Virus record (IMG/VR): IMGVR_UViG_3300028676_000005
Span: 62,001 to 126,000 of that record
Direction: 5' to 3' (one strand)
Length of the DNA stretch: 64,000 nucleotides
Positions 12,824 through 57,872 of this stretch are shown in pieces (position 1 is the stretch's first letter; every line of letters starts with the position of its first letter). The notes beneath the pieces were generated by a model, which worked only from the letters and a program-made list of their open reading frames with translations, had not been told where the DNA came from and made no database searches. The position numbers were made by a program, and so were the translations under genes.

Positions 12824-12861
12824 TATAACCCCCTACCCCAGCAATGGGGTAGGGGGTTATA
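12824..12861. terminator. Bidirectional hairpin terminator
   Basis: Perfect 17-bp stem with a GCAA tetraloop between convergent genes. Confidence 0.85.
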
Positions 12862-22274: not shown

Positions 22275-22295
22275 TGCAATTCCCCTTTGGAATAA

Positions 22296-22352
22296 TTAGT
22301 AATCAAATGATTTACTGTTACTTACTCACCCAGGTAATATAGGTTTGAAATG
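22296..22352. repeat. Direct repeat copy 1 (early promoter plus leader)
   Basis: 24-bp exact TTAGTAATCAAATGATTTACTGTT plus about 30 bp of similar sequence, shared with 34347-34402. Confidence 0.9.
22328..22347 (-). promoter_or_regulatory. Phage early promoter
   Basis: Minus strand CAAACCTATATTAC-CTGG-GT. Confidence 0.8.
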
Positions 22353-22361
22353 ATCTAGGAG

Positions 22362-22589
22362 TCAATGCATCGCCTGAAATACTTCACGATAACGATCCAG
22401 ATGTTGTTGTGCCAACTGGGTAGCTGTCGCCGCAAGTTTCATATAACGACGACGTTTCCAAGGCAACCAGGTTAACATTGCCATTTGGTTATAACTCAAT
22501 GCAAGTCCTAGGTGATGCCCAACAAGCATCCCACACTCTAACCGGAATTCCTTAGTAAGGATTGTTGGTATTGGTGTAATAGTTGACAT
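22362..22589 (-). CDS. Small hypothetical protein
   Basis: ATG 22589 after GGAG; 75 aa. Confidence 0.6.
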   Translation of the reverse strand: MSTITPIPTILTKEFRLECGMLVGHHLGLALSYNQMAMLTWLPWKRRRYMKLAATATQLAQQHLDRYREVFQAMH

Positions 22590-22788
22590 GATGATCTCCA
22601 TGGGTGTGTTAGTTAGCGGTAGTATGGCACTACCCTATTAAATTATAGACCCCCTCCCCAAATTAGTCTAAAGAATAGATAGCTAGTAAAAATCAACTAG
22701 GGGTATTTTTAAGCCACCGTTGCAATCTTATTTTAAACAATATTATGCCTTACTTAGACGCACTCTCTCCCTACCCTCGGGATTAACC

Positions 22789-23361
22789 ATGGCCATTCCA
22801 AGTAATCAATTGTTCCTGGATCGGTTCATCGAATATAACTCTGAGCGTTATAAAGATAACCCGTCCCTGGTTGCAATGTTTCAAGGGCTTACCCTTGACA
22901 AAGTCGAACTCACCAACCTTCGGGAAACTATTCTTGAAGATGGTAAGCCAGCCAACCTTTTTGATATCAAAGTTCCTGGAGTTTTTGTTGGTAAGAACCA
23001 AAAGTTCTATCCAGCGGATTACCTTGTACACAACGTAGCGGAGATCTCCAAGGATGAGCCCGTAACGTTGCAGGATCTCCCTGAAAAAGATACACCCGGC
23101 ATTTATACCGTTCTTCCAGAAGGCGGTAGCGCATTGGTACTTAAGGGCGGCAAGACTGAGGCGACAGTCAAGGCTCTGATTGAGGTTAAAGCCCTCTATG
23201 ACATTACCGATGCACAAATCACCATTAACACAGACCTTAGCTCTCTGACAATTAAGTCACCTACTATCGTGGGTACTTTGTACGTTACTGAAAGCATGTT
23301 TGACGATCTACTTCGCTATAACGGAAAACACCGTGCAGACGGTTCCGTTCGAGCACTCTAG
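22789..23361 (+). CDS. Putative tail/baseplate-associated protein
   Basis: Start moved to ATG 22789; C-terminal RYNG..R.DG motif typical of genes preceding tail fibres; N-terminal paralogue of 44522-45118. Confidence 0.65.
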   Translation: MAIPSNQLFLDRFIEYNSERYKDNPSLVAMFQGLTLDKVELTNLRETILEDGKPANLFDIKVPGVFVGKNQKFYPADYLVHNVAEISKDEPVTLQDLPEKDTPGIYTVLPEGGSALVLKGGKTEATVKALIEVKALYDITDAQITINTDLSSLTIKSPTIVGTLYVTESMFDDLLRYNGKHRADGSVRAL

Positions 23362-32897: not shown

Positions 32898-33188
32898 TTA
32901 GCCAACTGCCTTAGTAAGAATGTTGGTTACTACGGAAAAAACTTTGTAAGACCATTTGCTTTCAGTTTTACATTGAGCTGTTACCCACTCAATGTTGACT
33001 TCCAGCTCTTTCATTTTTTCTTCAACCATGCTGACTTTAATCAACATGTACTCCGCACGGCCCACATTACTGTTTGCAGTTAACCGCGCTTCCTTGTAAC
33101 GATCATTAACTTCAGCTTGCAGTAACCGGTGTTCACGCAGCATTGCGTTGATTACAGTGTCAAACTGAAACTCATTGTTAATAGTCAT
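32898..33188 (-). CDS. Small coiled-coil protein
   Basis: 96 aa. Confidence 0.7.
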   Translation of the reverse strand: MTINNEFQFDTVINAMLREHRLLQAEVNDRYKEARLTANSNVGRAEYMLIKVSMVEEKMKELEVNIEWVTAQCKTESKWSYKVFSVVTNILTKAVG

Positions 33189-33205
33189 GTTGTAATTCCA
33201 TTTAA

Positions 33206-33805
33206 TTAATTAAAGACGATCTTAATACCGGTAATGCATTTAGACCAGTTTTGTGAACATGGAGAACGGTTGGCATTATCGAAATAACGACCACGAAATA
33301 ATTCAATATCCAAAAGAACTACTGGTGGCTCTTCTTCAGGAGCACATTCTTTTGCAAAGAAAGCTTCCATGTCATCATCATCATCATCCCGACCGTCATC
33401 GTCACAGTCATCAAATGAATCATTAGGAAACTCATTATCGTAGTCAGCCTTATCACGGGCTACACGCTCCTGATGCTTTGGCAATGTAGTGCATGCCGTG
33501 CAGACGATTGTTGGCAGATCACCTTGCGCAGGGTAGTAATCGTAAGGAGTCCACGAGATGGAATCCTTAGTCTTTACAGTAAGTCTGCAATCATGACAAC
33601 AAACTATTGTTTCCCGTGCCTCAAGTTTTATTTTGTCACGACACCCTTCGCAAACAATGTAGTGCCCAACTGGACCAAAGCTATCTTCTTCGTAGAAGTA
33701 GCCAACTGCTTTACTGTGGTCGTCATACGAGGTATGATCACAGAAATCAGAACTTTCCAGATGAGGAAACTTAGTTGTAGCGCGATAACCGGTTTGGTTA
33801 GCCAT
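33206..33805 (-). CDS. Cys-rich putative zinc-binding protein with an acidic tract
   Basis: ATG 33805 after AAGGAG; CDH, CEGC, CHDC and CTAC; Asp-rich segment. Confidence 0.75.
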   Translation of the reverse strand: MANQTGYRATTKFPHLESSDFCDHTSYDDHSKAVGYFYEEDSFGPVGHYIVCEGCRDKIKLEARETIVCCHDCRLTVKTKDSISWTPYDYYPAQGDLPTIVCTACTTLPKHQERVARDKADYDNEFPNDSFDDCDDDGRDDDDDDMEAFFAKECAPEEEPPVVLLDIELFRGRYFDNANRSPCSQNWSKCITGIKIVFN

Positions 33806-33822
33806 TCGATAATACTCCTTTA

Positions 33823-34332
33823 TTAAAAACCTTTTGCGCGTTTGTGAACCACAGCGAGTGCTTCTTCCTCGCTTAGGCCATACATGTACATGCCTTGTGC
33901 AACGTGGGCTTCTATTTCCCAAGGCTGAGCAAAGTATTCAGATAGCGTTGTGTGAAGCTTGTAAACTTCACCCTCCCAGATGTAATGATCATCACGGGAC
34001 ACTAACCGACCTTCTTGCATCTGTCTTACATGGGTAAGCTCATGCACAAGAGTACCAACATAAATACGTTGCTGGCTGGCCTTAACAAGACGCTCCATGA
34101 GTGTAAACTCTTCATAGATGCGTTCTATGTTAACAAACATAGCGATCTCTGACTGGGTGCTGCCTTTTGGCAACCAATTGCAAACCCAGGCATTAAGATC
34201 AGACATGGCTTTAGCCTGAGGCATGTCATTATTAACAAGGATGACACGAATGTCATATGGCTTGACTAGGTCGTAACCTTCTTCGCCAAAGTAATCTACA
34301 AACAGCTCTTTATCGCAATTATCCAAAATCAT
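33823..34332 (-). CDS. Zincin-like metallopeptidase domain protein
   Basis: LVHELTHVRQ (HEXXH) plus downstream Y..QPWEIEA. Confidence 0.8.
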   Translation of the reverse strand: MILDNCDKELFVDYFGEEGYDLVKPYDIRVILVNNDMPQAKAMSDLNAWVCNWLPKGSTQSEIAMFVNIERIYEEFTLMERLVKASQQRIYVGTLVHELTHVRQMQEGRLVSRDDHYIWEGEVYKLHTTLSEYFAQPWEIEAHVAQGMYMYGLSEEEALAVVHKRAKGF

Positions 34333-43757: not shown

Positions 43758-44414
43758 TTACTTATGTAAGTTAACTAACCAATCCTTAGGTCCTTGGCAA
43801 AGTAGGAAAGCTGGGTGGAGTCTTTCCAGAAAGAACGGCAATCGCAAAGTGCGTTTGGTTTTCAATTCAATAAAGTCCAGCACACCAAACATTGGGTGAG
43901 GAGTGAGTACCGACAGGTTGAAGATGTAGGTATTCCCCGACATTACAACTGCCACACGGCCCTTGCTATTGGCGTGAAGCAAGCGGAAGATAACGGTGAA
44001 GTAATTGTGGTGAAAGAATTCTTCCAGCAACTTGATAGTTGGGCTACCAACTGATTTGATTTTCCAGTTAGTAGGGTCTTTGGGGTTTGGACGACTGTTG
44101 AAATGGTTATGTACAGATGGCTTGCCACCAAGAGTATCCGGAGTTTCCAGAATACGCTTATCACGGAAATGTGAAGTCGCCATGATGTCAGTGAGTGTAT
44201 CAATGGCGTAAAGCAACTCTGCACGGTCTGCACGGGTCATAGGAGACCCGGTAAAGAAACTATTGGTCTTTGCATCAAGACACGAGTCATGACGGTCGTA
44301 ACGCTCTTTAAAGGTTTCGAACGTTTCTTCTTTAGGGCTATCCCGTTCAACAAGAGCAAGTAGCTCACCAAGACCTGGTTGTGGCATTTTCAAAACAGAA
44401 CTAAACTTTTTCAT
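43758..44414 (-). CDS. Hypothetical protein (paralogue of 43155-43691)
   Basis: 218 aa. Confidence 0.8.
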   Translation of the reverse strand: MKKFSSVLKMPQPGLGELLALVERDSPKEETFETFKERYDRHDSCLDAKTNSFFTGSPMTRADRAELLYAIDTLTDIMATSHFRDKRILETPDTLGGKPSVHNHFNSRPNPKDPTNWKIKSVGSPTIKLLEEFFHHNYFTVIFRLLHANSKGRVAVVMSGNTYIFNLSVLTPHPMFGVLDFIELKTKRTLRLPFFLERLHPAFLLCQGPKDWLVNLHK

Positions 44415-44483
44415 GTAATTGTCCCAATGCTGTGTTATGTTAATAAGTTGACGGTACAGTTATAAAACGATATTGCAGACATA

Positions 44484-44516
44484 ACCCCTACCCACTCTTG
44501 CGAGGGGGTAGGGGGT
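44484..44516 (-). terminator. Hairpin terminator
   Basis: CCCCTACCC/GGGTAGGGG stem; the loop reads GCAA on the minus strand. Confidence 0.75.
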
Positions 44517-44521
44517 AACCT

Positions 44522-45118
44522 TTAAGCTACAGGTTCTGCACCGGCCAGTTGACCGTAGTCGGTGTCAGGGATTTCCAACATTGGGATTACAGCTTCGACC
44601 CAAGTCAGAGTACCGTTGTAAGTAGTACCGGCAATGGCAACAGTAGTGCCACCTTCTGGTACAGTGTAACCATCGTTCTCGTACTGCATTGCTGCGGTCA
44701 GAACGGTGCCTACAGCGGCAGCCACATCGGCGGTTTCGATACCTTCTGGAATTACAACACCAGCGGTAGGAACACCTTCGCCGTCCAGGTAGACGTAAAC
44801 ACCGGCTACCGTTTGTTCGGCCAGAGCTGCTTCGTCAGCCAGAGGAGCACCTGGGTTTTTCAGGGTCCACAGGTTGAGGTCAGTAGCCGCGTTGGCTGCA
44901 GTCCAGGACTGGTTAACACCGCGGAAGCGACGAGTAGCCGACGCAACCGAAGCGTTAAAACGGTTGGGTTGAGCCAACGCAGTGATCGACGTGATTGCTA
45001 CGTCAGGAAAGGTCAAACCGGTAAAGTACGCGAGACTGGTCGCGTCATCTTTGTAACGGTTCAGGTTAAAAGCAAGGAAACGTTCAAAGAACAGTTCCAA
45101 ATGTTTCTTAGCAGCCAT
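44522..45118 (-). CDS. Putative virion protein, paralogue of 22789-23361
   Basis: ATG 45118 after GAGGT; shared N-terminal LF..RF...N..RYKD...L...F.GLT motif; Ala/Thr/Gly-rich. Confidence 0.7.
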   Translation of the reverse strand: MAAKKHLELFFERFLAFNLNRYKDDATSLAYFTGLTFPDVAITSITALAQPNRFNASVASATRRFRGVNQSWTAANAATDLNLWTLKNPGAPLADEAALAEQTVAGVYVYLDGEGVPTAGVVIPEGIETADVAAAVGTVLTAAMQYENDGYTVPEGGTTVAIAGTTYNGTLTWVEAVIPMLEIPDTDYGQLAGAEPVA

Positions 45119-45122
45119 ACCC

Positions 45123-45180
45123 ACCTCGTCAGTATCTTAAAACCCTGGCACAATACCTGGGTATAAGATCCTGACGAGGT
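45123..45180 (-). promoter_or_regulatory. Long hairpin sequestering the SD of 44522-45118
   Basis: ACCTCGTCAG...CTGACGAGGT outer stem plus inner ATCTTA/TAAGAT pairing. Confidence 0.6.
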
Positions 45181-45188
45181 TTATTAAG

Positions 45189-46817
45189 TTAGTGTGTGCT
45201 AACAGCAAACAGCTTGCTGGTGATCAACACTGAACTCAGGTTAGCCAGGATTTTGGCAGTTTGCATACCGCCTTTCAACGCTACAACCGAAGCATGTGCT
45301 GTGTCGTAGATACCCAGATCTTCAGGGTAACCAATTTCCCCGTTTGCCAGGTTCACTACGGTAAGGTCACCTTTCAACAGTTCCTTAACGTCAGCGGTCA
45401 GACGTTCGTATTGCATTTCACACACTTCGACAATGTGTTCTAAAATGTTGAGCTTGTTTTGGTCTTTTTCGTTGTAGTATTGGGCAACCACTGTTCGGCA
45501 AGCCTTAATCAGGCTAGTGCCAACCCCAGGCAAGATGCCGTTAGTAAGCGCACTCTTAACAGCTTTGATAACGTCCTCAAAGCGGTCTTTACGCTCTTTA
45601 ACGTCAGCCTCGGTCTCACCGCCAACCCAGATGGTGATAACTTCACCAGAGAGGTTACGAACACGCTCCTCATCAAAACGAGCACGACGACCAAACCGAG
45701 TAGCCCCGTCATAATTACCCAGGGCTTCTTTAATGAGGTCAATACGAGTTTTGATACGCGCTGTTGCCGCAGCATTTGGAGTAAAGACAGAACGGCCAAC
45801 GCCGACGACCAATGGAGTTTCCGTTACCAGCATATTTCTAACGCCACTAACTTGTTCCAGAGCCGACCAAGATGGGACACCAAAGATAGCCGAGAGATCC
45901 TGCATGATCATGCTACCAACTGAACCGCCAGTACCATTAACCCGGCAGCCAATCATGCTCCTGGATGCACGTACGTTGTCAGGATGTTTGTTAAAGCCTA
46001 CTATGAAACTATCCATGGAAGTTTCGATGGAACGACAGATCAGAACAAACACAACATCAGACGCCTCAACAGGTTTAACGGACATAAGCTGTCCCATCAA
46101 CGCACTCAAACGTTCACCATCAGAATTACGAATGGAGTCATCCAGAATAATTGGGATGTATCGGTTGAGTGTACGCTTACCGCCGCTTGGCCCAGAATAA
46201 AGAGCTGAGTTGCTGTACTCCATGTTGATAGTAAGTCCGTTACCACGAACAATCTTGTCGGTATCTTCAACACCGTTAATCAGATCAAACGAAGGGAACG
46301 AATTAGGATTAGCACGATACTGGTCAATGACAATCTGGCTCAACCCTTCATCATTGTTAGACGAAGTAAGAGCCAGTTTGAAAAGCCGATCATCATTAAC
46401 ATCAATAATGATTGCCTGCTCACGCAAAGAGTGAATCAACTTTTCGCCAACTTCTTCGATAAACCGTTGGTCGCGATAGGTTGGATACCCACGGAACAGA
46501 TTGTAGAACGCCGAAGTCAGCATGATGGTAGTGGTGGTGCCGTCACCACATTCTTCATCAGTCTTGATTGGTGCTTGAGTCATGATCTTGTTGACCACTT
46601 CTTCACGCGGGTCGTTGAATGTAATTGCACGAGCAACGGTTACGCCATCTTTGGTAACCTTAGTGCTGTTACCGGTGGTGAGTACTGCCAGACGACCGTT
46701 AGGACCCATCGTGGCGGTTACAGCCTGGTCTACAGTCTCGACCACTTTGGTTACCATTGTTCTTACATCAGCGTCCAGAGTAATGAACTGAACGGCACCA
46801 TTTTTAACTTCCGACAT
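45189..46817 (-). CDS. groEL: Phage GroEL-like chaperonin
   Basis: TMGPNGR, TKDGVTVA, GDGTTT, ERKDRFED and GILPGVG motifs; 542 aa; no GGM tail. Confidence 0.95.
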   Translation of the reverse strand: MSEVKNGAVQFITLDADVRTMVTKVVETVDQAVTATMGPNGRLAVLTTGNSTKVTKDGVTVARAITFNDPREEVVNKIMTQAPIKTDEECGDGTTTTIMLTSAFYNLFRGYPTYRDQRFIEEVGEKLIHSLREQAIIIDVNDDRLFKLALTSSNNDEGLSQIVIDQYRANPNSFPSFDLINGVEDTDKIVRGNGLTINMEYSNSALYSGPSGGKRTLNRYIPIILDDSIRNSDGERLSALMGQLMSVKPVEASDVVFVLICRSIETSMDSFIVGFNKHPDNVRASRSMIGCRVNGTGGSVGSMIMQDLSAIFGVPSWSALEQVSGVRNMLVTETPLVVGVGRSVFTPNAAATARIKTRIDLIKEALGNYDGATRFGRRARFDEERVRNLSGEVITIWVGGETEADVKERKDRFEDVIKAVKSALTNGILPGVGTSLIKACRTVVAQYYNEKDQNKLNILEHIVEVCEMQYERLTADVKELLKGDLTVVNLANGEIGYPEDLGIYDTAHASVVALKGGMQTAKILANLSSVLITSKLFAVSTH

Positions 46818-46853
46818 AACTGTATCTCCACAAAATTAATGTACCTAATGTAC

Positions 46854-46873
46854 ACAGTAGTAATATAGGTTTG
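46854..46873 (-). promoter_or_regulatory. Phage early promoter of groEL
   Basis: Minus strand CAAACCTATATTAC-TACT-GT. Confidence 0.8.
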
Positions 46874-46884
46874 ATTTATTCTAG

Positions 46885-47502
46885 TTATTTGTCAAACACT
46901 TCACGTTCAAAGAACTTACGGGTTTGGTGAATGGCTTTAATAGCCTTATCAACACCAGCAATCAACTCGCTAATATCTTTAACTTCTTTAAGAGCTTTTC
47001 CATCGTTGTACTCTTTAGAGTTAAAGTAGATGGCATTCACCCGCTGACAATCTGCAATGCGTAAGCTACCCTGACCGTCTTCAGTAAGGTCATAAGCCAC
47101 ATAGCCACCGTATGCGCTAGTCTCGGGATTTAGCCACTCACGCCGAGTTACAGGGCCATCCACGCCAGGTTTGGCATAACGCTTGCGCCATTCCTTATTA
47201 GCCTCTTCTAATACTTCTTTAAGGAGAGTTAACTTCTTCTCTAGAAGCACTAGCCCAATGTCTTCGTTATTAGTGTGCAGTGTAATCCGCACAAGAGTAA
47301 AGAGAGTAAAGCTACCATTCCAGTTATAACGGTATAACTCTGGTTCGCCTTTCTTGCGAGTAGCCTGTGGTTCTAGCCACGGGTTAACCCACATTGAGTA
47401 TGCATAAAAACTAAGATCGGGAATAAACGTTGCATTAATAAAAGATTTACTAAGTACTGAAATACGATCAAACAGAATCGTGCCAGTTTCTGGATAATCC
47501 AT
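46885..47502 (-). CDS. Hypothetical protein
   Basis: Start moved to ATG 47502 (AGGA SD) because the track's GTG lies inside a terminator stem. Confidence 0.75.
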   Translation of the reverse strand: MDYPETGTILFDRISVLSKSFINATFIPDLSFYAYSMWVNPWLEPQATRKKGEPELYRYNWNGSFTLFTLVRITLHTNNEDIGLVLLEKKLTLLKEVLEEANKEWRKRYAKPGVDGPVTRREWLNPETSAYGGYVAYDLTEDGQGSLRIADCQRVNAIYFNSKEYNDGKALKEVKDISELIAGVDKAIKAIHQTRKFFEREVFDK

Positions 47503-47534
47503 GGGCGGTCCTAAAAGAAAATAAATGAGGTTGT

Positions 47535-47568
47535 GTAAACCCTCCACCTGTTAAAGTGGAGGGTTTAC
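47535..47568 (-). terminator. Hairpin terminator
   Basis: 13-bp stem GTAAACCCTCCAC. Confidence 0.75.
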
Positions 47569-56745: not shown

Positions 56746-57269
56746 AATAATGTGGTCCTTTCATGCACGGCCACCCAAACGCCATAACGCTGGATGAGAT
56801 AAGTTGGCGAACCCATTATGGGATAAATATCACCCATAAAGGAAATACGAACGTTAAACCCGGCCAGTAAGCTGTCATATACCGGTGTTGGAATATCGAC
56901 CGCCCCAGGAGTATTCAGGTAAGCCTGTGCGACCAGTTCTGATTCAGCGCTGATCTTGTAAAACAGATCAATGATTTTCTCCAGGGGAAGCTCTGGATAC
57001 CCGTACGACAACAAATTAATGTAAACCGGGTTTGGGCGGTGTCCAATCAAAAACATAATGGTGTTTTTGAAATTCTCTTTATAATTATTAGCCAGTGCTT
57101 CCGCCAAACTTTGTTTAGCTAAAGTCTCGTTATCAGCCATGCGCTTACGACTTTCAGCATGGTAAAGCGCCACCCGACGATCTACTTCAGTAGGTTCTTT
57201 AGCAACTTCAACACGACCAAAGTTGCTAAAAAGACCCTTGAAATACATCCACCAAATCCAGTTCTTCAT
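56742..57269 (-). CDS. Hypothetical protein
   Basis: 175 aa, ATGA overlaps. Confidence 0.75.
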   Translation of the reverse strand: MKNWIWWMYFKGLFSNFGRVEVAKEPTEVDRRVALYHAESRKRMADNETLAKQSLAEALANNYKENFKNTIMFLIGHRPNPVYINLLSYGYPELPLEKIIDLFYKISAESELVAQAYLNTPGAVDIPTPVYDSLLAGFNVRISFMGDIYPIMGSPTYLIQRYGVWVAVHERTTLL

Positions 57270-57619
57270 TTGTTTTCCTTTATGTATTTTTCATAAGCTG
57301 CTTTATTGCCTGCAGTTTTTCGCTCATGACACGCAGGAGTATCAAACTTACCCCAGCAATGGCGGTAATCAAAACCTTTAGCCCAGGTAGACAAATCTTC
57401 TGCCTGTTTTTGCATACCCATTGTAACTAGCCAGCTAAACAGCACAATCCCCGCAATAACGAATACAACATCACGAAAGGTTCGCAGACGACCTTTCAAA
57501 CTACGAGATTCAGCCAACTTAGCCGCTTCTTCTTCCCGGCGCTTTTTACTCATGCCGTGGACATACGCTAAAGTTTCTTTGCTAAGTGGCGCTGGGATAG
57601 GTGGTATATTTCTTGACAT
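57266..57619 (-). CDS. Single-pass membrane protein, Cys-motif family
   Basis: ATG 57619; TM followed by CWGKFDTPAC. Confidence 0.8.
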   Translation of the reverse strand: MSRNIPPIPAPLSKETLAYVHGMSKKRREEEAAKLAESRSLKGRLRTFRDVVFVIAGIVLFSWLVTMGMQKQAEDLSTWAKGFDYRHCWGKFDTPACHERKTAGNKAAYEKYIKENK

Positions 57620-57623
57620 GTGA

Positions 57624-57872
57624 TCACCAATTAGTTCTGAAGATGGCCGCATAAAGGACCATGACTGTAATAGGGATGACCTGAGCAGCAAGTAACAGCG
57701 TTGCTGCTTTATTCTGCTTCATACGTTTCCAGATACTTTTGCGCGGCTTACGTGGTGCCGGTGCGGTATCAACAATGGTGGCAAAAAATACTGGTTCGTC
57801 CAAGTGCAATTCCTCATAAAGAGGTTGTGCAGATAACCGACGTGCTTTAAGTCGTTTATGCTTGCCGCGCAT
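57624..57872 (-). CDS. Small basic protein with a C-terminal TM
   Basis: 82 aa. Confidence 0.7.
   Translation of the reverse strand: MRGKHKRLKARRLSAQPLYEELHLDEPVFFATIVDTAPAPRKPRKSIWKRMKQNKAATLLLAAQVIPITVMVLYAAIFRTNW

What the first reader, a model, noticed from the sequence alone, without database searches (positions are those of the whole stretch)
45118..45180. Long hairpin hides the ribosome-binding site of the gene downstream of groEL
Seen: the mRNA reads ACCUCGUCAG-GAUCUUAUACCCAGG...CCAGGGUUUUAAGAUA-CUGACGAGGU-GGGUAUG. The SD (GAGGU) is the 3' arm of a 10-bp perfect outer stem, and there is no U tract, unlike a terminator. Established: T4 silences late genes (e, soc, 49, I-TevI) on early read-through RNA this way. 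Inference: the structural-type gene 44522-45118 is translationally blocked on the early groEL transcript. It would be released by a late start inside the hairpin, by processing, or by temperature (RNA thermometer).
Basis: partly seen in the sequence, partly recalled or inferred. Interest (0 to 1): 0.6.

Follow-up and report, generated by a model that had tools for sequence, protein, structure and literature searches.

The report
Late promoter inside an RBS-hiding hairpin
In an uncultured EL-like giant phage, a conserved RNA hairpin hides the ribosome-binding site of a probable virion-protein gene on read-through RNA from the early chaperonin gene, and a late-promoter-like word sits inside the hairpin, so this looks like the bacteriophage T4 timing trick reinvented in a phage that uses its own unusual RNA polymerases.

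Summary
On the minus strand, 45180-45123 folds into a 58-nt hairpin (-34 kcal/mol, z -4.7). A perfect 10-bp outer stem holds the Shine-Dalgarno GAGGUG, 4 nt before the ATG at 45118. No U tract follows.

The genome is a 229-kb EL-like jumbo phage from peat metagenomes. It has no RNA data, so all functional evidence is comparative.

- **Read-through:** groEL carries an early-type promoter word (CTATATTAC) and no terminator lies before the next gene.
- **Conservation:** fourteen distinct relatives in eight lineages keep an SD-occluding outer stem through compensatory change. None of 14,833 arm re-pairings is as stable as the true pairing.
- **Promoter word:** all relatives keep GAT-N-Y-TAT-R in the 5' half. 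The word ATNYTATR is rare in this genome (29 copies). Twelve copies lie 15-90 nt upstream of genes, including the major head and tail sheath genes. It extends phiKZ's late promoter TATG.
- **Consequence:** a start at its last base yields RNA without the 5' arm, with a freer SD.

The thermometer and terminator readings are not. This is a new member of a known kind. Start-site mapping is still needed.

The parts
46860..46868 (-). Early-type promoter word CTATATTAC, about 50 nt upstream of the groEL-like ATG
   Evidence: The word is invariant upstream of groEL in 7 relatives and matches the published phiKZ (TATATTAC) and EL early-promoter consensus words (PMC7058600). About 20 copies in the genome lie upstream of genes.
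45189..46817 (-). GroEL-like chaperonin gene (542 aa), 40% identical to phage EL gp146
   Evidence: Pfam Cpn60_TCP1 1e-22; phrog_5725 4e-112; tblastn against EL-like phages.
45171..45180 (-). 5' arm of the outer stem (ACCUCGUCAG). It is present only on RNA that starts upstream, that is, on read-through RNA
   Evidence: A lake-water strain has A45180 changed to G, which turns the A-U pair into G-U and keeps the pair.
45162..45169 (-). Late-promoter-like word ATCTTATA (ATNYTATR). The proposed late transcription start is its last base, 45162
   Evidence: GAT..TAT is invariant in 14 distinct relative sequences. The word occurs 29 times in the genome, and 12 copies lie 15-90 nt upstream of starts, against 8% for composition-matched words. 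It precedes the major head, tail sheath and virion-protein genes. It is the only gene-strand copy in each of 7 related loci. The phiKZ late promoter is TATG with the start at G (PMC4666361).
45142..45162 (-). Apical stem-loop. It would be the 5'-terminal stem-loop of the proposed late mRNA
   Evidence: In nearly all relatives a stem-loop begins at or within about 5 nt of the TATR, with unrelated sequences.
45122..45132 (-). 3' arm of the outer stem (45132-45123), containing the Shine-Dalgarno GAGGUG (45127-45122)
   Evidence: The modelled unpaired probability of the SD region is 0.11 on long RNA and 0.44 on RNA starting at 45162.
44522..45118 (-). Downstream gene (198 aa), orthologue of EL gp147 and a probable virion (baseplate-periphery type) protein
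   Evidence: 40% identity to EL gp147; phrog_18233, and an N-terminal match to a 'virion structural protein' family. The AlphaFold model has pLDDT 93. BFVD matches reach 1e-15, several of them annotated virion structural proteins. The best PDB match is 9xqd chain 0, phiKZ baseplate outer periphery, Z 6.1.
44475..44515 (-). Terminator-type GC hairpin followed by TTATGTCTGC, at the end of the two-gene unit
   Evidence: It matches the phiKZ terminator architecture of a hairpin plus TTAT (bioRxiv 10.1101/2023.10.13.562163).
22740..23361 (+). Paralogue of the downstream gene (ATG at 22789), with the same word ATATTATG at 22740-22747, 42 nt upstream of its ATG, and no occluding hairpin
   Evidence: tblastn 27% identity, 9e-8. 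The upstream block CAATRTTATGCC is invariant in relatives whose proteins are 51-62% identical. The fold is not more stable than shuffles (z +1.2).

Best explanation
The element is a two-level timing switch of the T4 type. Early in infection, the phage's early RNA polymerase starts at the CTATATTAC-type promoter upstream of groEL. It meets no terminator and runs on into the next gene. On that long RNA the 10-bp outer stem pairs the Shine-Dalgarno sequence of the downstream virion-type gene with a complementary stretch just after the groEL stop, so ribosomes cannot load. The groEL stop lies 8 nt before the stem, too far for a terminating ribosome to open it. Later, the second phage polymerase starts at the last base of the ATCTTATA word, which lies inside the hairpin downstream of the 5' arm. 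That shorter RNA has a 44-nt leader that lacks the 5' arm. It keeps only the apical stem-loop at its 5' end, which may add stability, and it leaves the SD and AUG accessible.

Shown here: the structure, its conservation by compensatory change, the invariance of the word, the genome-wide promoter-like behaviour of the word, and its presence upstream of head and sheath genes.

Inferred: which polymerase uses which signal, the exact start site, that early RNA really reads through, and that translation is really blocked.
For: Structure: -34.4 kcal/mol, z -4.69.

Read-through set-up: an early-type word lies upstream of groEL in the window and in 7 relatives, and there is no terminator-type flank or call at the hairpin.

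Covariation: a 5' arm next to the word pairs with the 28 nt before the ATG in 14 distinct sequences. Own-pair duplex energy averages -12.3 kcal/mol against -6.5 for cross-lineage pairs. With one representative for each of 8 lineages, the own-pair mean is -12.2. All 14,833 derangements average -7.1, the best reaches -10.0, and none reaches the own value. L005 and L012 differ by a clean A-U to G-C swap. SD-like purines lie in or next to the 3' arm in every lineage.

Promoter word: GAT..TAT is invariant. ATNYTATR occurs 29 times against about 112 for permuted patterns. 41% of copies are upstream of starts against 8%. The only permuted pattern that matches this is the early-promoter word itself. 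The word sits upstream of the major head protein, tail sheath and two virion structural protein genes. ATTTTATGTG lies upstream of the major head gene in EL and RisingSun. There is a single gene-strand copy in each of 7 related loci, always in this hairpin. The paralogue keeps the word at -42 without a hairpin. In EL, gp147 has CATCCTATG after a canonical terminator.

Modelled SD accessibility rises from 0.26 to 0.48 on average on the short RNA, and from 0.11 to 0.44 in the window.

The phage encodes split RNA polymerase beta-like and beta'-like fragments.

Published basis: the phiKZ late promoter TATG starts at G (PMC4666361, PMC12809450), and T4 genes e, soc, 49 and I-TevI use this logic (PMC3014915).
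Against: There is no transcript evidence at all. The genome comes from peat metagenomes and no RNA run holds it.

The window's word ends in A, not the G that phiKZ's polymerase needs in vitro. However, 5 of the 12 upstream copies in this genome end in A.

The longer 11-mer around the word is unique in the genome, and plain TATG is only 1.4-fold enriched upstream of genes, so the promoter assignment rests on the 8-position degenerate word.

In 2 of 14 relatives the modelled short RNA does not free the SD.

In most relatives a small ORF ends inside the 5' arm. There, translation of that ORF would open the stem even on long RNA, so the element may serve coupling rather than silencing in those phages.

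The structural role of the downstream protein rests on weak fold similarity (Z 6.1) and on family annotations.
Confidence: 0.62

Rival explanations
1. The element is a translational-coupling or dosage device without a temporal role. The stem merely keeps translation of the downstream gene low, or makes it depend on ribosomes arriving from the upstream ORF. The conserved word would then be something other than a promoter.
For: In relatives that carry the 67-76 aa small ORF, its stop codon lies inside the 5' arm or within about 1 nt of it. In L004 the ORF reads through the hairpin. A terminating ribosome would therefore melt the stem. Outer stems are weaker in those relatives (-6 to -13 kcal/mol) than in the three genomes without the ORF (-16 to -19).
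Against: In the window the upstream stop is 8 nt before a 10-bp stem of -19 kcal/mol, beyond the reach of a terminating ribosome (established ribosome footprint; inference). This reading does not explain the invariance of GAT..TAT while both stems vary. It also does not explain the promoter-like genome distribution of the word or its presence upstream of head and sheath genes.
Confidence: 0.15
2. The element acts on the groEL message. It would be a terminator or attenuator for the early polymerase, a 3' stabiliser, or an RNase III-type processing site, and its overlap with the RBS would be incidental.
For: It lies just after the groEL stop. Long interrupted helices of about two turns resemble phage RNase III sites (recalled knowledge, not tested). 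The close relatives L002, L004 and L011 have GGTTATGG after the stem, which resembles the TTAT tail of phiKZ-type terminators (bioRxiv 10.1101/2023.10.13.562163).
Against: This genome's terminator-type hairpins have perfect 12-17 bp stems, short loops and T-rich tails. The target's tail scores at the random mean. Relatives that already have a separate GC hairpin after groEL still keep this element. In more distant lineages no TTAT follows the stem. A terminator has no need to pair with the SD in all 8 lineages.
Confidence: 0.12
3. The conserved GGAT..TATR word, presented in a helix, is an RNA operator for a trans-acting protein, such as an autogenous repressor or a phage nuclease, that controls this gene family.
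For: A sequence that stays invariant inside a helix whose partner strand varies suggests sequence-specific recognition. The word also occurs upstream of paralogous copies.
Against: The same word precedes unrelated late genes (head, sheath) and is avoided elsewhere in the genome. This fits a DNA-level promoter better than a gene-specific operator. The paralogue presents the word without any stable structure.
Confidence: 0.07
4. The hairpin is an RNA thermometer: it melts at higher temperature and releases the RBS.
Against: The modelled unpaired probability of the SD region stays at 0.11-0.14 from 15 to 60 C. Known thermometers use short, mismatch-rich stems (established knowledge), whereas this one has a perfect 10-bp GC-rich stem. 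The source is a peat and lake phage.
Confidence: 0.02

Closest known systems
Bacteriophage T4 genes e, soc, 49 and I-TevI: inhibitory hairpins on early or middle read-through RNA, with a late promoter inside the structure (PMC3014915)
   Same: An SD or AUG is sequestered in a helix whose 5' strand is present only on transcripts started upstream. A late promoter lies between the two strands, so late RNA lacks the inhibitory strand. The downstream gene has a late function.
   Different: T4 uses host RNA polymerase with gp55 and the TATAAATA late promoter. Here the signal is an ATNYTATR word of the phiKZ TATG type, presumably read by a phage-encoded multisubunit polymerase. The clade is different (EL-like jumbo phage). 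The outer stem is longer, and most relatives add a small upstream ORF that ends in the 5' arm. Nothing here has been shown experimentally.
phiKZ late promoters: TATG at -3 to +1, read by the non-virion RNA polymerase (PMC4666361, PMC12809450)
   Same: The core TAT-purine is at the proposed start. The consensus is very short. The word lies upstream of structural genes.
   Different: Here a longer word, A-T-N-Y-T-A-T-R, is definable, and A is accepted at the last position in 5 of 12 sites. No promoter embedded in an RBS-occluding hairpin turned up in the phiKZ and 201phi2-1 transcriptome papers read (PMC11512511, bioRxiv 10.1101/2023.10.13.562163) or in the one literature search made for it.
Phage EL, gp146 (GroEL) to gp147 interval
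   Same: The gene pair is orthologous. A CATCCTATG word followed by a stem-loop lies upstream of gp147.
   Different: EL has a canonical terminator (stem plus a U10 run) after groEL and a 130-nt spacer. It has no comparable SD-occluding outer stem.
phiKZ-type intrinsic terminators: GC hairpin followed by TTAT (bioRxiv 10.1101/2023.10.13.562163)
   Same: Both are hairpins in an intergenic space. The genome has many such terminators, including one directly after the downstream gene.
   Different: The target has an interrupted 58-nt helix, a G-rich tail and a start codon 4 nt after the stem.

Membership tests
T4-type temporal control (RBS-occluding hairpin with internal late promoter) | A stable helix sequesters the SD and/or the start codon of the downstream gene | tested here: met
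   -34.4 kcal/mol, and an SD unpaired probability of 0.11 on long RNA.
T4-type temporal control (RBS-occluding hairpin with internal late promoter) | The helix is under selection (kept through compensatory change) | tested here: met
   across 8 lineages, none of 14,833 arm re-pairings is as stable as the true pairing.
T4-type temporal control (RBS-occluding hairpin with internal late promoter) | An upstream earlier-class promoter with no intervening terminator, so that read-through RNA carries both arms | tested here: inconclusive
   The early-type word upstream of groEL is conserved and no terminator-like feature intervenes. However, no RNA data exist.
T4-type temporal control (RBS-occluding hairpin with internal late promoter) | A late promoter located between the two arms | tested here: met
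   Met at the motif level only. ATNYTATR at 45169-45162 is invariant in relatives, is distributed like a promoter, and precedes head and sheath genes.
T4-type temporal control (RBS-occluding hairpin with internal late promoter) | A late transcript 5' end mapped inside the hairpin, and translation seen only late | not testable with these tools
   The phage is an uncultured metagenome genome and no RNA runs hold it.
T4-type temporal control (RBS-occluding hairpin with internal late promoter) | The downstream gene has a late function | tested here: inconclusive
   Family members are annotated as virion structural proteins. The best solved match is a phiKZ baseplate protein at Z 6.1, which is middling.
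Intrinsic terminator (phiKZ type) | An uninterrupted GC-rich stem with a short loop, followed by a TTAT or U-rich tail | tested here: not met
   the stem is interrupted and the G-rich tail scores at the random mean.
RNA thermometer | The RBS helix melts within the physiological temperature range | tested here: not met
   SD pairing is unchanged from 15 to 60 C in the thermodynamic model.
Translational coupling by an upstream ORF | The stop codon of the upstream ORF lies within, or within ribosome reach of, the inhibitory arm | tested here: not met
   In the window the spacer is 8 nt. The feature is met in relatives that carry the small ORF.
Any curated Rfam family | A covariance-model match | tested here: not met
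   no match at E <= 1 in 44300-47000.

The most novel reading that the evidence does not exclude
The element may be a three-input switch conserved across an EL-related clade. One 60-nt stretch would act at the DNA level as the late promoter for a non-canonical phage RNA polymerase. At the RNA level it would act as an RBS occluder on early read-through RNA. In most relatives it would also be a coupling gate that is opened by ribosomes finishing a small membrane-protein ORF whose stop codon sits in the 5' arm. The window's lineage would have lost that ORF together with the post-groEL hairpin, and would have compensated by doubling the strength of the stem.
Probability: 0.25. Interest if true: 0.6.

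Novelty: new member of a known kind. Interest (0 to 1): 0.5.

Why it matters
Gene timing in phiKZ/EL-like giant phages is thought of almost entirely as a hand-over between two phage RNA polymerases. Their late promoter is notoriously under-defined: four bases, TATG. If this reading is right, it matters in three ways.

(i) These phages also use RNA structure to keep late genes silent on early read-through RNA. That would be a convergent copy of the classic T4 solution.

(ii) The late promoter of the EL branch can be written as a longer, testable word, ATNYTATR. This word finds the head, sheath and virion-protein genes and is avoided elsewhere in the genome.

(iii) The loss of a terminator plus a small ORF in one lineage, together with a stronger stem, gives a natural experiment on how read-through is tolerated.

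The finding is useful for annotating jumbo-phage transcription units and for building phage-derived expression parts. It is not a new principle.

Tried and rejected
- **No near relatives in two collections:** a megablast of the locus against GenBank phages found nothing. IMG/VR scans with both proteins also found nothing. Relatives came from the word-indexed protein search, from contig look-ups and from one metagenome scan.
- **No RNA evidence:** no RNA run holds the sequence. Laying contigs of four DNA runs gave only one variant in the hairpin, an A-U to G-U change.
- **Technical failures:** a whole-genome sliding fold timed out. A first crude gene call picked an antisense ORF over the real gene and skipped this interval, so I replaced it with a codon-usage-scored call. 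Searching the relatives' whole contigs by handle was not possible (one search was a coordinate slip).
- **Idea rejected, a long genome-wide consensus:** the 11-mer GATCTTATRCC is unique in the genome, and hits with up to 2 mismatches look random.
- **Too weak to use:** TATG, TTATG and TTATGC alone are enriched only 1.3-1.7-fold upstream of genes.
- **Idea rejected, a terminator tail:** the 3' flank GGGTATGGCTGC is not a variant of the TTATGTCTGC terminator tail by the flank matrix, and ATGGCTGC is explained by the conserved Met-Ala-Ala coding.
- **Alignment limit:** the MAFFT alignment of the hairpins is not structurally consistent (registers differ by 1 nt between lineages). I therefore measured covariation by own-versus-cross duplex energies instead of column counts.
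- **No match:** Rfam.
- **Irrelevant here:** a sigma-70-like match at 45278-45250, because it lies upstream of the whole hairpin and phiKZ-type infection does not depend on the host polymerase.
- **Uninformative:** Pfam on the small ORFs of relatives.

Full report
**What is there.** The window is bases 62001-126000 of a single 229,429-bp viral contig, which CheckV rates complete. Peat metagenomes and one lake-water metagenome hold it, and no RNA library does. It is a distant relative of Pseudomonas phage EL. The 542-aa chaperonin (45189-46817, minus strand) is 40% identical to EL gp146, and the next gene (44522-45118) is 40% identical to EL gp147. On the minus strand the interval reads as follows:

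- groEL stop, then 8 nt
- ACCUCGUCAG (45180-45171)
- GAUCUUAUA (45170-45162)
- an apical stem-loop (45162-45142)
- UAAGA
- CUGACGAGGU (45132-45123), which contains most of the SD GAGGUG (45127-45122)
- GGGU, then AUG at 45118

RNAfold gives -34.4 kcal/mol for the hairpin. The z-score is -4.69 and none of 200 shuffles folds as well. No U tract follows.

**It is not a terminator.** This genome has about 35 perfect 12-17 bp GC-rich intergenic hairpins with short loops and T-rich tails. A subset is followed by a TTATGTCTGC-like word. That is the architecture described for phiKZ terminators, a hairpin plus TTAT (bioRxiv 10.1101/2023.10.13.562163). One such element lies directly after the downstream gene (44515-44475). 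The target differs in three ways: it is interrupted, it is 58 nt long, and its G-rich tail scores at the random mean of a matrix built from 51 terminator flanks. The generic scan does not call it and Rfam has nothing.

**The transcription context.** About 20 genes are preceded by CTATATTAC. This is the published early-promoter word of phiKZ (TATATTAC) and resembles the EL consensus (PMC7058600). groEL has it about 50 nt upstream of its ATG (46868-46860), and it is invariant in seven relatives. The genome encodes split RNA polymerase beta-like and beta'-like fragments, and one beta-like gene has the early word upstream, as expected for a phiKZ-type two-polymerase programme. So groEL looks early. 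With no terminator before the next gene, early RNA should run through the hairpin to the terminator at about 44,500. This step is inferred, not observed.

**Comparative evidence for the structure.** The word-indexed protein search, contig look-ups and one metagenome scan gave 14 distinct sequences of the interval. They fall into 8 lineages whose downstream proteins are 89% down to 36% identical to the window's. Every one has a hairpin ending a few nucleotides before the ATG. The outer-stem sequences are unrelated between lineages, for example ACCUCGUCAG/CUGACGAGGU, CUUUUAGGG/CCCUAAAGG and UUUCC..GGG/CCC..GGGAA, and the SD-like purines always lie in or next to the 3' arm. L005 and L012 differ by a clean A-U to G-C double change.

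MAFFT does not keep the helices in register. I therefore scored duplex energy between the 13 nt upstream of the conserved word and the 28 nt before the ATG. True pairs average -12.3 kcal/mol and cross-lineage pairs -6.5. With one representative per lineage, the true assignment averages -12.2. All 14,833 derangements average -7.1, the best reaches -10.0, and none reaches the true value. A lake-water strain changes A45180 to G, which makes a G-U pair. The helix is under selection.

**The conserved word.** Both stems vary, but GAT-N-Y-TAT-R at the junction is invariant. The 11-mer around it is unique in the genome, so it is not a long consensus. Several observations then gave the degenerate word A-T-N-Y-T-A-T-R:

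- The window carries a paralogue of the downstream gene (ATG at 22789). It has ATATTATG ending 42 nt upstream of its ATG, at almost the same spacing as the target's 44 nt. That block is invariant in relatives whose proteins are 51-62% identical, and there is no stable structure there.
- EL gp147 has CATCCTATG downstream of a canonical terminator.

The word has the following properties in this genome:

- It occurs only 29 times on both strands, whereas 383 composition-matched permuted patterns average 112.
- 14 copies are intergenic, although only 6% of the genome is intergenic.
- 12 copies lie 15-90 nt upstream of a same-strand start. That is 41%, against 8% for permuted patterns.
- The single permuted pattern that equals this is TATATNRY, the early promoter itself.

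The genes behind the other eleven sites include the major head protein, the tail sheath and two virion structural proteins. ATTTTATGTG also lies upstream of the major head gene in EL and in Erwinia phage RisingSun. In seven related loci of 3.9-5.6 kb, the word occurs exactly once on the gene strand, always in this hairpin. In phiKZ, late promoters are defined by TATG, with transcription starting at the G (PMC4666361, PMC12809450). The simplest reading is that ATNYTATR is the late promoter of the EL branch, and that one copy sits inside the hairpin, downstream of the 5' arm.

**Consequence for the RNA.** An RNA starting at 45162 lacks the 5' arm and the 5' strand of the second helix. It keeps only the apical stem-loop, now at its 5' end, and has a 44-nt leader. 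The modelled unpaired probability of the SD region rises from 0.11 to 0.44 in the window and from 0.26 to 0.48 on average. It rises in 12 of 14 sequences. The spacing from the word to the ATG is 41-52 nt throughout. SD pairing on the long RNA is flat from 15 to 60 C, which removes the thermometer option.

**The downstream gene.** A confident model (pLDDT 93) matches many jumbo-phage proteins in BFVD, down to 1e-15. Several of these are annotated as virion structural proteins. Its only notable solved match is a chain of the phiKZ baseplate outer periphery (9xqd, Z 6.1, 127 residues aligned; structure described in PMC13250141). PHROGs also links its N-terminal part to a virion structural protein family. 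A late, structural role is likely but not proven.

**A complication and a piece of history.** Most relatives carry two further features between groEL and the hairpin: a GC hairpin, and a 67-76 aa ORF that looks like a small hydrophobic membrane protein. The stop codon of that ORF lies inside or next to the 5' arm, and in L004 the ORF runs through the hairpin. There, ribosomes finishing the small ORF would open the stem, so the element could also act as a coupling gate. The window, L002 and L011 lack both features, and they have the strongest outer stems: -16 to -19 kcal/mol, against -6 to -13 in the others. In the window the groEL stop is 8 nt from the stem, too far for a terminating ribosome to unwind it. 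That judgement rests on the established ribosome footprint and is an inference.

**Verdict.** Termination and temperature sensing are not supported. Processing and a protein operator remain untested minority options. I did not find this arrangement in the phiKZ and 201phi2-1 transcriptome papers I read (PMC11512511, bioRxiv 10.1101/2023.10.13.562163) or in the one literature search made for it. It is, however, the same principle as in T4, so I rate it a new member of a known kind. The extended late-promoter word is a useful by-product.

Noticed in passing
window 12824-12861; genome 203142-203179; about 35 sites genome-wide: The genome carries a family of perfect 12-17 bp GC-rich intergenic hairpins. 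Some copies are nearly identical. Their tails are T-rich, and a subset is followed by a TTATGTCTGC-like or TTATAGCTGC-like word on both strands between convergent genes. They look like phiKZ-type (bidirectional) terminators.
   Followed up: partly
window 46860-46868 (-) and about 20 other sites, e.g. upstream of the genes starting at window 49994, 54341, 66267, 69161 and 79157 (all -): The early-type promoter word CTATATTAC is usually followed by a semi-conserved box (..GGGTGAGTAA.. or ..GGGTAGATAAC..), and often by a leader hairpin that pairs with the SD.
   Followed up: partly
L004 2252-2482; L005 2290-2493; L006 2244-2447; L008 2245-2448; L009 2226-2441: Relatives carry a conserved 67-76 aa hydrophobic, probably membrane-spanning small ORF (MT.GMR.LWE.K...) plus a GC hairpin between groEL and the gp147-like gene. 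Both are absent from the window, L002 and L011. Pfam finds no match.
   Followed up: partly
window 22789-23361 (+): This is a paralogue of the downstream gene (27% identity) at the head of a plus-strand block. A conserved 30-nt upstream block ends in TTATGCC. The interval upstream of it (about window 22295-22788) is long and has no called gene.
   Followed up: partly
L022 and L023 (metagenome loci): In the most distant relatives the gp147-like gene is preceded by another copy of the same family (tandem paralogues), not by groEL. The GGATACTATG word and an SD-occluding stem are still present.
   Followed up: no
window 47535-47568 (-): The GTG start that the ORF list gives for 46885-47547 lies inside a 13-bp perfect hairpin directly after the stop of the upstream gene. 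The start is probably mis-called and the hairpin is terminator-like.
   Followed up: no
window 33188-33823, 57269-57624, 69710-70050 (-): These intervals of 340-630 nt were left empty by my codon-usage gene call, but they visibly contain open reading frames. One of them is rich in cysteine. Small genes are being missed there.
   Followed up: no
genome 216467-218677 (-), about 114949-115053 (-), about 228824-228997 (-): These are split RNA polymerase beta-like and beta'-like fragments. The first has an early-type promoter word (CTATATCAT) upstream, as expected for a non-virion polymerase made early.
   Followed up: partly
window 45180 (and 45074, 45270-45363): A lake-water population (run X10) carries the same locus with 7 substitutions in 501 nt. 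The only one inside the hairpin keeps the base pair (A-U to G-U).
   Followed up: yes
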